Shown here one piece after another: positions 74 through 6,703 of a stretch of DNA of 64,000 nucleotides; the stretch's first letter is position 1, and each line of letters opens with the position of its first letter. The DNA is taken from sequence record MN871449.1; one strand, written 5' to 3'. A program made the translations under genes and the position numbers. The notes below the pieces were generated by a model, which had not been told where the DNA came from, ran no database searches, and saw only the letters and a program-made list of their open reading frames with translations.

Positions 74-841
74 ATGGCTAAGTTACACGAAGTATTGGCA
101 GCAGAACCCACTCGCACCAAACAAGTGCAAGTCCTGATCGAAGACGCCAGTAAAAAATTCAATAAATCGGCTGAATATTTCAGCGGGTTTGATAAAACCC
201 TGAAACTGCACGAAGACAACGACGCCAACGCCGCGATCGAAAAAAGCGAAAGTACCAGCAAGGCAGTGATCACCACTGTTGCCGAAACGTTGCAGTACCT
301 CTTCGAATATTTCGCCACCGCAGAAGATCTTCGTCTGCAAAAAGCCCTGACTAACCAGGTCGCAAAAGCAGACATCATGTTCAAAGGCGAAGTCCTCGTT
401 TCTGGAGTGCCGGTAGATGAACTCCTGGGCCTGGAAAAACGCCTGGCGGAACTGCGCAAACTGATCGCCGCGGCCCCTACTCTGGATTCGTCCAAACAAT
501 GGGAACGCGATAGCAACAGCACCTACGGATTCCGTACCGTGACGGACGAAGTCACGACGAAAACCGAGAAAGTGCTCACTCCGGTTATCCTGGCGCCGGC
601 TACCGACCACCACCCTGCACAGGTGAAAGAATCGGAAAGCACCGTCGTAATCGGTAGCTTCACCCGTAAAAGCTATTCCGGCGCCTGCACCCCGATGCAG
701 AAAGCCAACGCACTGCGTGATATCGACGAACTGATCGTTGAAGTCACTAATGCACGTATGCGTGCAAACTGCACCGAAGTTGTTCAGGGTTCTATCGGCG
801 AAGTGCTGACCAACGTGATTCTGAAAAACTTCACTGCTTAA
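74..841 (+). CDS. Conserved hypothetical protein (255 aa; MAKLxxxxAxE...HPAQV family), candidate partner of the downstream structured RNA
   Basis: Clean ORF, AAGGAA RBS, strongly optimised codons (CTG/ATC/ACC/AAC). Motifs A-D-I...VPVxxLLxLEKRL and ATDHHPAQV resemble, from memory, a widespread uncharacterised bacterial/phage family. Confidence 0.85.
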   Translation: MAKLHEVLAAEPTRTKQVQVLIEDASKKFNKSAEYFSGFDKTLKLHEDNDANAAIEKSESTSKAVITTVAETLQYLFEYFATAEDLRLQKALTNQVAKADIMFKGEVLVSGVPVDELLGLEKRLAELRKLIAAAPTLDSSKQWERDSNSTYGFRTVTDEVTTKTEKVLTPVILAPATDHHPAQVKESESTVVIGSFTRKSYSGACTPMQKANALRDIDELIVEVTNARMRANCTEVVQGSIGEVLTNVILKNFTA

Positions 842-850
842 TGTGTTAGT

Positions 851-1110
851 AATGGGTATTCTCACGAGTGCCCATTGATAATAAAGATTGAGGCCAACTT
901 TATCTTTATTGTTAGTCCGTGTTGCAGGTGTGATGACCCCACTGGAAGTTCGACTCTTTCTTCTCCCACCAAACTATGGGAGAATGGCGGAATTGGTAGA
1001 CGCAGTCATCAATGCACCCATAATGCGACCCGGATGGTTAGTGTTAACTTTATCTTATCGCCTCACACGCTTAAAGATAAAGAGTAAACAGTAAAATAGC
1101 GGACTGAACT
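851..1110 (+). ncRNA. Structured RNA domain containing circularly permuted tRNA-like module 1 (931-1011)
   Basis: T-arm GGAAG-TTCGACT-CTTTC (944-960), TTCTCCC-A-CCA (961-971), linker AACTAT, GGGAGAA (978-984, perfect complement), D-arm GCG-GAATTGGTAGA-CGC, then GTCATCA (1005-1011) pairing with TGATGAC (931-937). Confidence 0.8.
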
Positions 1111-1124
1111 TTCTTTCTCTTACG

Positions 1125-1245
1125 GAAAGAATTCTAGAGGTCGCGGATTCGAATTCCGCTCTGCCTACCTGGACACATTCACAGAGTGTTTCTTGGAGGC
1201 AGATAGCTCAGCCGGTAGAGCACTAGATTATAAAATAAAACTTCC
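1125..1245 (+). ncRNA. Circularly permuted tRNA-like module 2 (1133-1227)
   Basis: TCTAG-AGGTC-GCGGA-TTCGAAT-TCCGC-TCTGCCT-A (1133-1167), ~29-nt hairpin linker, then AGGCAGA-TA-GCTC-AGCCGGTA-GAGC-A-CTAGA (1197-1227). Acceptor and anticodon stems are perfectly complementary in permuted order. Confidence 0.8.
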
Positions 1246-1393
1246 AATCTTATTCTTAGATAGGTCGCGCTAAATTCTGTTTATAGCTGAATGGCTATGG
1301 GCGGTGTTGGGGATGGTTATATCCTTACCTCCGCCCTTCTTACCACAAAAGTTTCTTTTTCAAAGAGATCACTTTTTGATAAATAAATTAATC

Positions 1394-1432
1394 GAGAGAG
1401 GAGGGAATTCCCTCCTCTCTCCTATGCTTTTT
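1394..1432 (+). terminator. Intrinsic terminator-like hairpin ending the gene+RNA unit, followed by TATG
   Basis: GAGAGAGGAGGG-AATT-CCCTCCTCTCTC, then CTATGCTTTTTT. Confidence 0.75.
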
Positions 1433-1480
1433 TACGGTAAACTGTTTTAATGTAGAAGACACTTTTTAATTGAGGAATTT

Positions 1481-5277: not shown

Positions 5278-5379
5278 TGTTCTCGTAGCTCAACTAGGTA
5301 GAGCGCCTGCATCGGCGGCCACTGCGCCGCCAACTGCTTAGCAGGAGGTTGCCGGTTCAAATCCGGAAGGGAACAACCA
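5278..5379 (+). ncRNA. tRNA-like RNA with an extended anticodon arm (30-nt structured loop)
   Basis: Acceptor TGTTCTC/GGGAACA, A-CCA, D-arm GCTC/GAGC, T-loop TTCAAAT. CCTGC/GCAGG encloses ATC-GGCGGC-CACTGC-GCCGCC-AACTGCTTA. Confidence 0.8.
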
Positions 5380-5550: not shown

Positions 5551-5640
5551 AGAGAGTTGGATGAGCGGTTTAAGTCGCTCCCCTGCTAAGGGAGTGTATC
5601 CGAAAGGGTACCGAGAGTTCGAATCTCTCACTCTCTGCCA
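5551..5640 (+). tRNA. tRNA-Ser (GCU)
   Basis: CTCCC-CT-GCT-AA-GGGAG, long variable arm, G73, CCA. Confidence 0.95.
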
Positions 5641-5893
5641 AATAATGACATCTTACTTAGACTAAAGGCAGGGGTTAACCAGGCGACTTAATGTTGCGGA
5701 GAGTTAATCTTGGCCTAAGGCAAAAGTTGACCTCGGCGTGCTGAGGGGGATGTCTCCTTGTTATCCCTACGTAAATCATCGACGAATAAATGAGCCGTTA
5801 AATACGACCCATTTAAGCATAATTGCATCTCGGCTAAACACCGGGCGCTGCTGGTGTAGATGATACTCATTGAGTGCTAGGGAACCTATTCAA
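5641..5893 (+). ncRNA. Unclassified structured RNA within the tRNA array
   Basis: Nested helices 5765-5769/5878-5882, 5775-5780/5859-5864, 5793-5797/5831-5835, 5798-5803/5811-5816, 5838-5844/5851-5857; hairpin 5731-5746. No ORF of 60 aa or more. Confidence 0.55.
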
Positions 5894-6001
5894 TGATAGG
5901 CTAGCTTAAAGGTAAAGCGCGGGCATTAGGCCCCCTCTCATACGAGGGGCGCCTTAACATGGGAGCCTGAGATAGCCGTTCGATTCGGTACCTATCAACC
6001 A
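5894..6001 (+). ncRNA. tRNA-like RNA with an extended anticodon arm (40-nt structured loop)
   Basis: Acceptor TGATAGG/CCTATCA, A-CCA, D-arm GCTT/AAGC, T-loop TTCGATT. CGGGC/GCCTG encloses ATT-AGGC-CCCCTC-TCATAC-GAGGGG-C-GCCT-TAACATGGGA. Confidence 0.8.
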
Positions 6002-6005
6002 AAGT

Positions 6006-6703
6006 TGGACTTAAAAGAGAGAGTGCGAGTTAATGGGTCGCACAACGCCACTAGGCGAGACACCGGAGTCAGTGGTGGCGCTAGTAGAAGAAGTCAGTTA
6101 CCGGTATGCGGCCGCAACAAATTAACTGATACCCATTCTACACTTTTAAAGTCCACGTAACCTTTACAATACTGCTCTAGTCAAGTGATATTGTTTACAG
6201 AGAGTGCAGGTTCGACTCCTGCTCGGTAGTAGAGGCTCGGTAGGAAGGGAGTTCGGAATCGTATCCGAATGATTTGTCCAATAAGCAATAACTTATTGGT
6301 AACTCTCGTGAGACAAAGACTTCGGCGACCCGCCGGTTAAACGCGCCGCGGAATCGGCCGAGGGGTACTAATTATGACGCCTGTCAATTTCGGCGGCCTA
6401 CGCCTTAGAGCGAAAATAGGCGGCCATAGACCATAGACCTCAGCCGGGGATTCCGGCGAAAGAGGTGCAAGGAGCCGGCAAAAATGTCCGGGGGCGTCAC
6501 CCTATTCGATCCATTTCTCCAACGTAGAAGGGATCGGGTATTAAAAATCTGGAAATTAAGCTAACTCGTATAGCCGAGAATAAACATGTTTCGGTGGCGA
6601 CCTTAACATGAAAAGGATGATGTGCGATAAGTCATTTATGAGCTAAACACTGAGATCCTTTTGACTATTAGTCAGTACGAGAGAGGGTCGAAAGACCCTC
6701 TCT
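6006..6703 (+). ncRNA. Large unclassified structured RNA region (one or several RNAs)
   Basis: Closed domain 6006-6155, isolated T-arm 6206-6222, many helices from 6252 to 6662, terminal hairpin 6680-6703. No ORF of 60 aa or more in ~700 nt. Confidence 0.6.

What the first reader, a model, noticed from the sequence alone, without database searches (positions are those of the whole stretch)
911..1036. Circularly permuted tRNA-like module 1 with an internal encoded CCA
The 3' half comes first: T-arm 944-960, then acceptor strand TTCTCCC-A-CCA 961-971. After a 6-nt linker come the perfectly complementary GGGAGAA (978-984) and a Leu-type D-arm. The anticodon stem is replaced by a long interrupted helix: GTCATCA/TGATGAC, 3-nt bulge, CACC/GGTG, 5-nt bulge, TGCGAC/GTTGCA. 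Inference: RNase P cleavage at 978 and trimming to the CCA would give a two-piece, potentially aminoacylatable tRNA mimic with no anticodon. There is no G3.U70 pair, so it is not Ala-charged like tmRNA. Both bulges lie on the same strand, so this is not a canonical BHB splice motif.
Basis: partly seen in the sequence, partly recalled or inferred. Interest (0 to 1): 0.88.

Follow-up and report, generated by a model that had tools for sequence, protein, structure and literature searches.

The report
Permuted tRNA-like RNA beside DUF7873
The feature is a real, conserved small RNA built like a tRNA turned inside out, and it belongs to a large, apparently undescribed set of such RNAs that always sit just after one unknown-function gene (DUF7873) in many phages and bacteria.

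Summary
Window 915-1035 (+) folds into a T arm, a 7-bp acceptor helix closed by the loop ACCA-AACUAU, a tRNA-Leu-type D arm, and a 22-bp interrupted helix made by the two ends.

It is not a chance match or a tRNA pseudogene. A model-free scan finds only two such modules in the whole 304-kb phage genome, at 944-1003 and 1143-1221. Both lie directly after the DUF7873 gene (74-841).

The same pairing recurs widely. Modules follow the gene, always on its strand, in 65 of 69 distinct viral-contig loci and 73 of 80 bacterial loci. All three helices covary. Short-linker members keep NCCA (25/28) and A-2/U-1 before the 5' acceptor strand, which fits RNase P cutting and a functional CCA end.

The architecture is that of YrlA (bacterial Y RNA tRNA mimics). 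However, the Rfam score, the Ro60-binding motif and a neighbouring Ro60 gene are all missing.

Module 1 carries every known E. coli LeuRS determinant (A73, A15-U48, G18G19). Leucylation is therefore plausible but untested. The cellular role is unknown, and DUF7873 is the likely protein partner.

The parts
74..841 (+). DUF7873 (PF25283) gene, 255 aa. It is the conserved upstream neighbour and candidate protein partner of the RNA modules.
   Evidence: Pfam E = 2.7e-72. It is the only protein family conserved around the modules in 82 viral-type loci and 80 genome loci. AF2 model pLDDT 94.9 with no fold match in PDB or BFVD.
875..910 (+). Leader between the gene and module 1, with hairpin AUAAAGAU...AUCUUUAU. 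A promoter is predicted here in the FBKp24 record.
   Evidence: 100% conserved in FBKp24 and Centimanus. FBKp24 carries a 'promoter' feature at the equivalent position. This is weak evidence. In relatives the gap from stop codon to T arm can be as short as 41 nt, which favours co-transcription with the gene.
915..937 (+). 5' strand of the long interrupted closing helix (GUCCG, GUUGCA, GGUG, UGAUGAC). It occupies the position of the anticodon stem.
   Evidence: MFE fold. Compensatory 923/1027 change and the G.U change at 933. A closing stem of at least 5 bp is present in 66/91 family members, against 27 +/- 4 after shuffling.
938..943 (+). Variable-loop equivalent CCCACU. U943 corresponds to U48, the Levitt partner of A15.
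   Evidence: Sequence. U48 is present in 17/17 Leu-type modules against 24/74 of the others.
944..960 (+). T arm (GGAAG UUCGACU CUUUC).
   Evidence: Helix 1 is paired in 99.9% of cells, and all 5 pairs covary.
961..971 (+). 3' acceptor strand UUCUCCC, discriminator A968 and encoded CCA 969-971.
   Evidence: NCCA follows the stem in 25/28 short-linker relatives. The discriminator is A in 14/17 Leu-type modules.
972..977 (+). Linker AACUAU. The predicted RNase P site lies between U977 and G978.
   Evidence: In short-linker relatives, -2 is A in 26/28 and -1 is U in 18/28. Cleavage is inferred, not shown.
978..984 (+). 5' acceptor strand GGGAGAA.
   Evidence: 7/7 complementary to 961-967. All 7 acceptor pairs covary across the family, with 88.7% of cells paired against about 45% when the partner is slid.
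985..1004 (+). U8 G9, tRNA-Leu-type D arm (GCGG AAUUGGUAGA CGC) and A26.
   Evidence: blastn matches annotated tRNA-Leu genes in E. coli.
1005..1035 (+). 3' strand of the closing helix, with the AUG and CAUAA bulges.
1097..1271 (+). Module 2, a second permuted tRNA-like RNA. Its parts are an outer helix (1097-1105 with 1260-1271), a hairpin (1119-1135), a closing stem (UCUAG 1133-1137 with CUAGA 1224-1228), a T arm (1143-1159), an acceptor helix (1160-1166 with 1197-1203), an ACC-hairpin linker (1167-1196) and a D arm (1206-1222).
   Evidence: Rfam YrlA 37.6 bits (gathering score 69) and beta_tmRNA junction 24.8 bits. Fold z = -4.06. Found by the strict scan.
1297..1335 (+). Long hairpin downstream of module 2. 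It appears to keep pairing through several substitutions in FBKp24 and Centimanus.
   Evidence: read by eye from the alignment rather than counted formally.
1394..1432 (+). Intrinsic terminator (12-bp GC-rich hairpin plus a U run), the likely 3' end of the gene-plus-RNA transcription unit.
   Evidence: The hairpin is retained with changed sequence in FBKp24 and Centimanus.

Best explanation
Module 1 is a structured non-coding RNA. It belongs to a large, uncatalogued family of circularly permuted tRNA-like RNAs that are encoded one or two at a time directly downstream of a DUF7873 gene, on the same strand.

The likely pathway is as follows.
1. The RNA is made together with, or just after, the DUF7873 mRNA, on a unit that ends at the terminator at 1394-1432.
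2. Its two ends pair into a long bulged helix. This helix stands where the anticodon stem would be.
3. The centre folds into a tRNA elbow: T arm, 7-bp acceptor helix and D arm.
4. In this CCA-type member, host RNase P cuts between U977 and G978, and exonucleases trim back to the encoded CCA971.
5. The result is a nicked two-piece RNA. It is held together by the acceptor helix, the D/T-loop contacts and the closing helix.
6. This RNA presents a normal tRNA acceptor end with leucine identity (A73, A15-U48, G18G19) but no anticodon.
7. It acts as a tRNA mimic in a complex with DUF7873, in the way YrlA acts with Ro60.

Shown: the structure, its conservation and covariation, the link to the gene, and selection on NCCA and on positions -2/-1.

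Inferred: transcription limits, RNase P cleavage, leucylation, binding to DUF7873, and the cellular target.
For: Structure and conservation in this phage:
- The fold and all coordinates are confirmed.
- Close relatives conserve it, with one compensatory change and one G.U change.
- These are the only two such modules in the 304-kb genome, and both lie right after DUF7873.

Independent permuted Leu-type modules:
- Modules with different but 7/7 complementary acceptor strands occur in unrelated phage contigs and in phage phiM12.

Link to the gene in viral contigs:
- Model R1 hits cluster 20-400 nt after the DUF7873 stop codon in dozens of loci.
- The strict scan finds 93 modules on the gene strand and 0 on the other strand in 77 loci.
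- 65 of 69 distinct loci have a module within 1.6 kb downstream, at a median of 161 nt from stop codon to T arm.

Link to the gene elsewhere:
- The same holds in cultured phages of Proteobacteria, Actinobacteria and Cyanobacteria.
- It also holds in 73/80 bacterial genome loci, with 120 modules on the gene strand and 0 on the other.
- No other neighbouring protein is conserved.

Covariation:
- 94.6% of cells are paired, against 61.5% after shuffling and about 45% after sliding. All 15 pairs show two-sided changes.

Acceptor-end features:
- NCCA in 25/28 short-linker modules, A at -2 in 26/28, U at -1 in 18/28.
- A73 and U48 track the Leu-type D arm.

Precedents:
- LeuRS needs A73 and the elbow, not the anticodon or variable arm (PMC9976931).
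- M. smegmatis YrlA has a 7-bp acceptor helix, is cut by RNase P and receives CCA in vivo (PMC4201824).
Against: - There are no expression or end-mapping data for this phage or any relative.
- Most Leu-type relatives in the DUF7873 set have a long closed acceptor hairpin and no free CCA (NCCA 4/17). Cleavage and charging cannot be the shared function of the family.
- Permuted Leu-type modules also occur without a nearby DUF7873. Examples are phiM12, which has no DUF7873 at tblastn E <= 1e-5, and L023, L035 and L068. The protein is therefore not obligatory for the RNA.
- The gene-RNA link could reflect shared transcription rather than physical binding.
- The DUF7873 fold gives no clue to RNA binding.
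- The covariation alignment was fitted to the model.
- ACCA and part of the D arm were imposed by the first pattern scans.
Confidence: 0.6

Rival explanations
1. It is a genuine YrlA-type Y RNA that works through a Ro60 (Rsr) protein supplied by the host. The long end helix is the Ro60 site, and the tRNA-like part recruits other factors such as PNPase.
For: The order of elements matches YrlA: end helix, T arm, closed acceptor helix, D arm. Module 2 and relatives give sub-threshold YrlA hits of 34-45 bits. Phages with Ro60 are known to carry YrlA (PMC4201824). phiM12 has both module types within 4 kb of a DUF2828+vWA protein on the same strand.
Against: Module 1 gives no YrlA hit even at E <= 10. 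No module tested here (the window, L023, L046, L047 and ten DUF7873 loci) reaches the gathering score of 69. The GNCGAAN0-1G motif is absent from both 5' strands (read directly). No TROVE protein was detected by Pfam among the ORFs of at least 330 aa in the phage genome. In one search one of 26 matched families was not displayed. No homologue of the phiM12 DUF2828 protein is present. The conserved neighbour is DUF7873, not Ro60, in about 160 loci. Whether the Klebsiella host has Rsr was not tested.
Confidence: 0.12
2. It is mainly a cis-acting processing or stability element of the DUF7873 transcript. The tRNA-like fold recruits RNase P or other tRNA enzymes to define and protect the mRNA 3' end, and the released RNA has no function of its own.
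For: The modules begin as little as 41 nt after the stop codon, are always on the gene strand and are almost never upstream. RNase P-defined 3' ends next to tRNA-like folds are known from MALAT1/mascRNA (my own knowledge).
Against: A stabiliser would not need an aaRS-type identity set, with A73 and U48 co-varying with the D-arm type. It would not need two different modules in tandem, nor a long closing helix of its own. Modules also exist without DUF7873 nearby.
Confidence: 0.15
3. It is a decayed remnant of tandem tRNA-Leu genes, or a dimeric-tRNA junction, with no function.
For: Tandem copies of one tRNA gene would give complementary acceptor strands in this order. The YrlA authors warn that tRNA dimers can mimic YrlA. 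Two ordinary tandem tRNA-Leu pairs did pass the 7/7 filter (L125 and L139).
Against: There is no 5' half upstream and no 3' half downstream. The flanks instead pair with each other over 22 bp. The element is conserved at 7 differences in 121 nt, all outside the core helices. Acceptor helices covary across roughly 200 independent modules. The scan finds 213 modules on the gene strand and 0 on the other strand.
Confidence: 0.02
4. It is a true permuted tRNA or two-piece tmRNA gene. Its product is matured by circularisation and ligation, or with a coding piece, into a translation-competent molecule.
For: The 3' half precedes the 5' half, with an excisable linker and an encoded CCA, as in two-piece tmRNA and Cyanidioschyzon permuted tRNAs (my own knowledge). 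There are weak Rfam matches to the beta_tmRNA junction. A few relatives have an anticodon-like hairpin after the D arm (L023, L135 and L042).
Against: Module 1 has no anticodon loop, and no loop could be formed by joining the ends. It has no BHB motif, no tag reading frame or pseudoknots, and no G3.U70. ARAGORN finds no tmRNA. Only 2 of 91 family members have their own 5-bp/7-nt hairpin after the D arm.
Confidence: 0.03

Closest known systems
YrlA (Rfam RF02553), the bacterial Y RNA-like tRNA mimics bound by Ro60/Rsr. The closest single example is M. smegmatis YrlA (Chen et al. 2014, PMC4201824).
   Same: The two RNA ends form a helix. Within it lie a T arm, an acceptor-like helix closed by a loop, and a D arm, so the RNA is a circular permutation of tRNA without an anticodon. 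It is encoded next to its protein on the same strand, often with a second small RNA. M. smegmatis YrlA has a 7-bp acceptor helix, is cut by RNase P and ends in CCA.
   Different: The score is below the Rfam threshold, and module 1 gives no hit at all. The GNCGAAN0-1G Ro60 motif is absent. The conserved neighbour is DUF7873 (255 aa, unrelated fold), not Ro60/TROVE. The CCA is encoded rather than added. The D arm, A73 and U48 are of tRNA-Leu type, whereas YrlA has a near-invariant generic D arm.
Two-piece (permuted) tmRNA of Alpha- and Betaproteobacteria and cyanobacteria (Rfam RF01849, RF01850, RF04321).
   Same: The gene order is T arm, 3' acceptor strand, CCA, intervening segment, then 5' acceptor strand. 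From my own knowledge, maturation removes the segment to leave two base-paired pieces with a chargeable CCA end. The linker hairpin of module 2 and of many relatives aligns to the beta_tmRNA intervening segment.
   Different: There is no tag reading frame, no pseudoknots and no G3.U70 alanine identity. A full D arm is present. No SmpB link is evident. The scores are far below the thresholds.
Circularly permuted tRNA genes of Cyanidioschyzon merolae and some archaea (my own knowledge; no phage case was found).
   Same: The 3' half is encoded upstream of the 5' half, joined by a short linker that closes the acceptor stem. RNase P and 3' processing open it.
   Different: Those genes regenerate a normal anticodon loop through a BHB motif, a splicing endonuclease and a ligase. 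Here there is no BHB motif and no anticodon.
Minimalist tRNA-Leu substrates of E. coli LeuRS (Larkin et al. 2002, cited in PMC9976931).
   Same: These are acceptor/T/D-arm RNAs that lack the anticodon and variable arms. They are still leucylated if A73 and the D/T-loop contacts are intact. Module 1 has the same determinants.
   Different: Those are laboratory constructs with continuous chains. This is a natural, permuted RNA that is probably nicked. Charging of it is untested.

Membership tests
YrlA (RF02553) | End helix enclosing a T arm, a loop-closed acceptor helix and a D arm, in that order. | tested here: met
   for module 1. for module 2.
YrlA (RF02553) | Covariance-model score at or above the Rfam gathering score (69 bits). 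| tested here: not met
   Module 1 gives no hit at E <= 10. Module 2 scores 37.6 bits. Relatives score 34-45 bits.
YrlA (RF02553) | GNCGAAN0-1G Ro60-binding motif on the 5' strand of the end helix. | tested here: not met
   No CGAA occurs in 860-945 or 1037-1142 (read directly).
YrlA (RF02553) | Encoded within about 4 kb of a Ro60/TROVE gene on the same strand. | tested here: not met
   No TROVE hit was detected among the ORFs of at least 330 aa in the 304-kb genome. In one search one of 26 matched families was not displayed. No conserved neighbour other than DUF7873 was found.
YrlA (RF02553) | Bound by Ro60 in vivo. | not testable with these tools
   This needs immunoprecipitation. The presence of rsr in the host was not examined.
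Two-piece tmRNA | Permuted order with an encoded CCA and an excisable intervening segment. | tested here: met
Two-piece tmRNA | G3.U70 alanine identity, a tag reading frame and pseudoknots. | tested here: not met
   The pair is G3-C70. ARAGORN finds no tmRNA. Only partial sub-threshold beta_tmRNA matches were found.
Permuted tRNA genes (Cyanidioschyzon / archaeal type) | BHB motif at the transcript ends, and an anticodon loop restored after ligation. | tested here: not met
   Both bulges lie on one strand, with a 4-bp and a 6-bp helix between and beyond them. No anticodon loop can be formed.
Canonical tRNA (RF00005) | Detected as a contiguous cloverleaf. | tested here: not met
DUF7873-linked permuted tRNA-like RNAs (family defined here) | T arm, 7-bp acceptor helix made by a 3' strand lying upstream of its 5' strand, and a D arm, within 1.6 kb downstream of a DUF7873 gene on the same strand. 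| tested here: met
   for the window. The rule holds in 65/69 viral loci and 73/80 genome loci.
E. coli-type LeuRS substrate | A73, A15-U48, G18G19 in a Leu-type D loop, U54/U55/C56/A58, and a 3' CCA. | tested here: met
   All are present in the sequence. The determinant list comes from PMC9976931. Actual charging is not testable here.

The most novel reading that the evidence does not exclude
DUF7873 and its one or two permuted tRNA-like RNAs form a previously unrecognised, Ro60-independent ribonucleoprotein cassette. The cassette moves horizontally between phages and bacteria. In CCA-type members such as module 1, RNase P opens the acceptor loop. The resulting anticodon-less, two-piece RNA is then aminoacylated, here by LeuRS. 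This would make it a natural aminoacyl-RNA that works outside decoding, for example as a decoy, a sensor or an amino-acid donor.
Probability: 0.3. Interest if true: 0.9.

Novelty: new variant of a known kind. Interest (0 to 1): 0.78.

Why it matters
- It links an abundant unknown-function protein family to a specific RNA. The family has 335 confirmed viral-contig loci and at least 541 in species-representative bacterial genomes. It has no paper in the searched library and no PDB or BFVD fold match. The link gives DUF7873 its first testable functional hypothesis.
- It extends tRNA mimicry of the YrlA type beyond Ro60.
- Selection on an encoded CCA end and on aaRS identity nucleotides revives the open question, raised for M. 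smegmatis YrlA, of whether such mimics are charged.
- It corrects the published 'suppressor tRNA' of phage phiKp24 and similar annotations.
- It gives a simple rule for finding these RNAs, which current tRNA and Rfam tools miss.

Tried and rejected
- ARAGORN and Rfam at gathering thresholds found nothing at the locus.
- My first viral pattern had one N too many and found nothing. I corrected it.
- I looked for a phage Ro60. No TROVE hit appeared among the ORFs of at least 330 aa in the genome. In one search one of 26 matched families was not shown. There is no relative of the phiM12 DUF2828+vWA protein. That protein itself shows no sequence match to Ro60 structures, so calling it Ro60-like rests on domain architecture and my recollection only.
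- PHROGs, NCBIfam, PADLOC, a PDB sequence search and Foldseek (PDB, BFVD) gave nothing usable for DUF7873. The weak PUR-repeat fold hits (E about 0.3) are not evidence.
- Literature searches for permuted tRNAs in phages, for tRNA-like RNAs of jumbo phages and for DUF7873 found no prior description.
- RNAduplex on long flanks was uninformative. I replaced it with a direct closing-stem test.
- MAFFT on the raw modules split the 5' acceptor strand. I therefore built model R1 from sequences with linkers trimmed to 5 nt.
- I rejected the readings as a tRNA pseudogene, tmRNA, BHB-spliced permuted tRNA, permuted group I intron (the flanks are too short) or attachment site (the phage is a phiKZ-like lytic jumbo phage).

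Full report
**Source of the window.** The window is the first 64 kb of 'Serratia phage KpXa_1' (MN871449.1, 304 kb, host Klebsiella pneumoniae). The query 850-1450 matches that record at identical coordinates with 100% identity. The phage is a phiKZ-like jumbo phage, with Pfam hits to phiKZ internal head proteins, the phiKZ major capsid protein and chimallin. Twelve related records carry the same region at 91-100% identity.

**The observation.**
- T arm 944-960.
- UUCUCCC-A-CCA 961-971.
- Linker 972-977.
- GGGAGAA 978-984, which is 7/7 Watson-Crick with 961-967 and has G3-C70.
- A D arm 987-1003 identical in type to enterobacterial tRNA-Leu. blastn of 972-1012 hits annotated tRNA-Leu genes in every E. 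coli genome.
- The bulged helix 921-937 with 1005-1029, which extends by GUCCG 915-919 with CGGAU 1031-1035.

RNAfold reproduces the architecture without constraints, with z = -2.64. ARAGORN and Rfam at curated thresholds see nothing here.

**Close relatives.** FBKp24 and Centimanus are about 91% identical over the 601-base query (window 850-1450). They show seven changes within 915-1035, and none touches the T, acceptor or D helices.
- U923.G1027 becomes A-U, a change on both sides.
- A933 becomes G in FBKp24 only, giving G.U with U1009. That pair is acceptable only in the + strand RNA.
- G921 becomes A and breaks one pair next to an existing mismatch.

**Second module.** A second module lies at 1097-1271 and has the same permuted order (fold z = -4.06). 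With relaxed thresholds Rfam aligns it to YrlA, the bacterial Y RNA-like tRNA mimic, at 37.6 bits (gathering score 69). It also aligns to the permuted junction of beta-proteobacterial tmRNA at 24.8 bits (gathering score 84). Module 1 gives no hit at all.

**The YrlA precedent.** The YrlA paper (PMC4201824) describes this topology: an end helix that binds Ro60, a T arm, a loop-closed acceptor helix and a D arm. It reports that M. smegmatis YrlA has a 7-bp acceptor helix, is cut by RNase P in vitro, and is cleaved and CCA-tailed in vivo.

Three other defining features of YrlA fail here:
- The GNCGAAN0-1G motif is absent.
- No TROVE/Ro60 protein was detected by Pfam among the ORFs of at least 330 aa in the genome. 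In one search one of 26 matched families was not shown.
- No module tested here reaches the Rfam threshold.

**Independent copies elsewhere.** I scanned IMG/VR for the pattern T loop, 11 nt, ACCA, 9-30 nt, TGGCGGAA, and then counted acceptor complementarity. This gave 129 distinct sites. Their distribution centres on 3-4 pairs, as chance predicts, but with an excess of 12 sites at 7/7. Two of those are ordinary tandem tRNA-Leu genes. The rest are permuted Leu-type modules with unrelated acceptor sequences, in eight independent lineages. One lineage includes the cultured Sinorhizobium phage phiM12, where the module sits on a 16-bp perfect end helix. L023 and phiM12 also carry a YrlA-like module beside the Leu-type one, as this window does.

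**The unexpected result: a link to DUF7873.** BLASTP among ORFs of these loci showed that the gene just upstream of module 1 has homologues directly upstream of the module in L064 and L087, and 1.8 kb upstream in L042, at 28-40% identity. That gene is window 74-841, Pfam DUF7873, E = 2.7e-72.

I then fetched 80 viral contigs through a DUF7873 alignment. I searched them with a covariance model of the permuted core (R1). The best hits pile up 20-400 nt after the stop codon, on the gene strand.

A model-free scan confirms this. It required a 5/5 T stem with a TTCRANN loop, 7/7 acceptor strands 4-130 nt apart, and a D arm.
- It found 93 modules on the gene strand and none on the other strand.
- Of 69 non-identical loci, 65 have at least one module within 1.6 kb downstream. 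The median distance from stop codon to T arm is 161 nt. Twenty loci have two modules, and only one locus has a module upstream.

The same holds in other collections:
- Cultured phages of very different hosts: Ralstonia phiRSL1, Rhizobium RHph phages, Arthrobacter Racecar, Gordonia Keelan (67 kb), Vibrio K479 and Pseudanabaena PA-SR01.
- 73 of 80 loci from species-representative bacterial genomes, including Streptosporangiales, Nostocales, Myxococcota and Acidobacteriota. These hold 120 modules on the gene strand and 0 on the other.

In both sets DUF7873 is the only protein family conserved within 2.5-3 kb. The gene plus its RNA(s) therefore behaves as a self-contained cassette. In the whole KpXa_1 genome the scan finds only the two modules after DUF7873.

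**Structure support across the family.** On the 150 best matches, 94.6% of cells form standard pairs. This compares with 61.5% after shuffling and about 45% after sliding the partner by 1-3 columns. All 15 pairs show two-sided changes, including all seven acceptor pairs that join the upstream 3' strand to the downstream 5' strand. The alignment was fitted to the model, so these numbers lean towards the structure. The strict scan is independent of that bias. A closing stem of at least 5 bp, lying 3-6 nt before the T arm and right after the D arm, is present in 66 of 91 modules, against 27 +/- 4 after shuffling.

The scanner did not require CCA. Even so, in modules with linkers of 24 nt or less, the 7-bp stem is followed by NCCA in 25/28. 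The linker ends with A at -2 in 26/28 and U at -1 in 18/28. From my own knowledge, U at -1 is the base bacterial RNase P prefers at that position. Module 1 (ACCA AAC UAU | G) is a typical member of this class.

Among modules with a Leu-type D arm, the discriminator is A in 14/17 and position 48 is U in 17/17. In the other modules the figures are 16/74 and 24/74. The A15-U48 Levitt pair and A73 therefore travel with the D arm. According to the tRNA identity review (PMC9976931), these are the E. coli LeuRS determinants, together with G18G19 and the D/T-loop contacts. The anticodon and variable arm are dispensable, and truncated tRNA-Leu lacking the anticodon arm is still charged.

Leucylation of processed module 1 is thus a reasonable inference. 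It is not a general family property. Most Leu-type relatives continue the acceptor helix into a long closed hairpin and have no free CCA (NCCA 4/17). This parallels the difference between uncleaved Salmonella YrlA and cleaved M. smegmatis YrlA.

**DUF7873 itself.** A search of the protein collection found 232 relatives at E <= 0.001. The AlphaFold2 model is confident (pLDDT 94.9, pTM 0.71). It shows long helices and two long beta-hairpins. No PDB or BFVD structure matches it at E <= 0.001. There is no hit in PHROGs, NCBIfam, PADLOC or PDB sequences, and no paper in the library names it. Its role as the RNA's partner is inferred from genetic linkage only.

**Transcription unit.** The stretch 842-1480 has no credible ORF. 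A 12-bp GC-rich terminator hairpin with a U run lies at 1394-1432. It keeps its structure with changed sequence in FBKp24 and Centimanus. In relatives the RNA starts so soon after the stop codon that co-transcription with DUF7873 is likely. The promoter annotated in FBKp24 at the equivalent of 875-906 is only a prediction.

**Verdict.**
The RNA is a permuted tRNA mimic whose encoded CCA and RNase P context are under selection, and it has full leucine identity. Cleavage, the two-piece state and charging remain unshown.
- The feature is best filed as a new, DUF7873-linked variant of the YrlA kind of tRNA-mimic RNA. It is not a member of YrlA, tmRNA or the permuted-tRNA gene families, because defining features of each were tested and not met.

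Noticed in passing
window 1091-1170; L001 12242-12321 (FBKp24); L002 6237-6320 (Centimanus): The 'tRNA-Sup-TTA' published as a suppressor tRNA of phiKp24 is the 5' part of module 2: the hairpin 1119-1135, the T arm and the 3' acceptor strand. The same applies to 'tRNA-Stop(tta)' in Centimanus and 'tRNA-TERM' in LPKP23. No complementary 5' acceptor strand lies upstream, so this is most likely a mis-call. In KpXa_1 the loop has C at position 33, and ARAGORN does not call it.
   Followed up: yes
window 1167-1196, and linkers of many relatives (e.g. L163 4433, L165 3800, L239 3461): Long-linker modules share a hairpin with a loop of the form AUUC...GAGU, closing the acceptor helix after NCC. The ATTY..RAGT pattern occurs in 13/60 linkers against 1.5 expected. 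It aligns to the intervening segment of the Rfam beta-proteobacterial two-piece tmRNA model. This suggests a shared processing or binding signal.
   Followed up: partly
window 5279-5375, 5895-5997 and 5640-6700: A tRNA with an insert of about 25 nt scores 38.9 bits in Rfam and is missed by ARAGORN. A further tRNA-like match scores 34.4 bits. A GC-rich stretch of about 1 kb after the tRNA cluster has no ORF of 60 aa or more, carries a T-arm-like element at 6205-6221, and has no Rfam family.
   Followed up: partly
L181 591-800: A bona fide permuted (two-piece) tmRNA gene (RF04321, 73 bits, above the threshold of 47) lies 2.2 kb upstream of a DUF7873 cassette in a 76-kb viral contig.
   Followed up: no
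L023 9000-8200 (- strand): Several of the small RNA units read here, including a normal tRNA-Ile, are flanked by 5' GACAUAA-N5-UCC and 3' N5'-UC-GUC, where the 5-nt blocks covary. This suggests a flanking helix that may serve as a processing signal.
   Followed up: no
L046 (Sinorhizobium phage phiM12) 4948-5094, 6242-6306, 7627-9039: phiM12 has a Leu-type permuted module with ACCA, a YrlA-like module (35.2 bits), and a DUF2828+DUF7788/vWA protein on one strand within 4 kb. It has no DUF7873. DUF2828 may be a Ro60-like partner, but the homology was not established.
   Followed up: partly
L242-L321 (bacterial genome contigs): The DUF7873 cassette is common in bacterial chromosomes, with at least 541 loci. 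In most of the 80 loci examined the gene is followed by two modules about 140 nt apart. In Streptosporangiales the acceptor loops are mostly short and closed.
   Followed up: partly
L047 (Cronobacter phage GAP32) 4988-5096, and Erwinia/Serratia/Yersinia giant phages: Unannotated YrlA-like modules (44.7 bits in GAP32) lie in the tRNA regions of the roughly 355-kb GAP32-like phages.
   Followed up: no
window 1297-1335: A long hairpin between module 2 and the terminator appears to keep pairing through several substitutions in FBKp24 and Centimanus. This was read by eye from the alignment and not counted. Its role is unknown.
   Followed up: no
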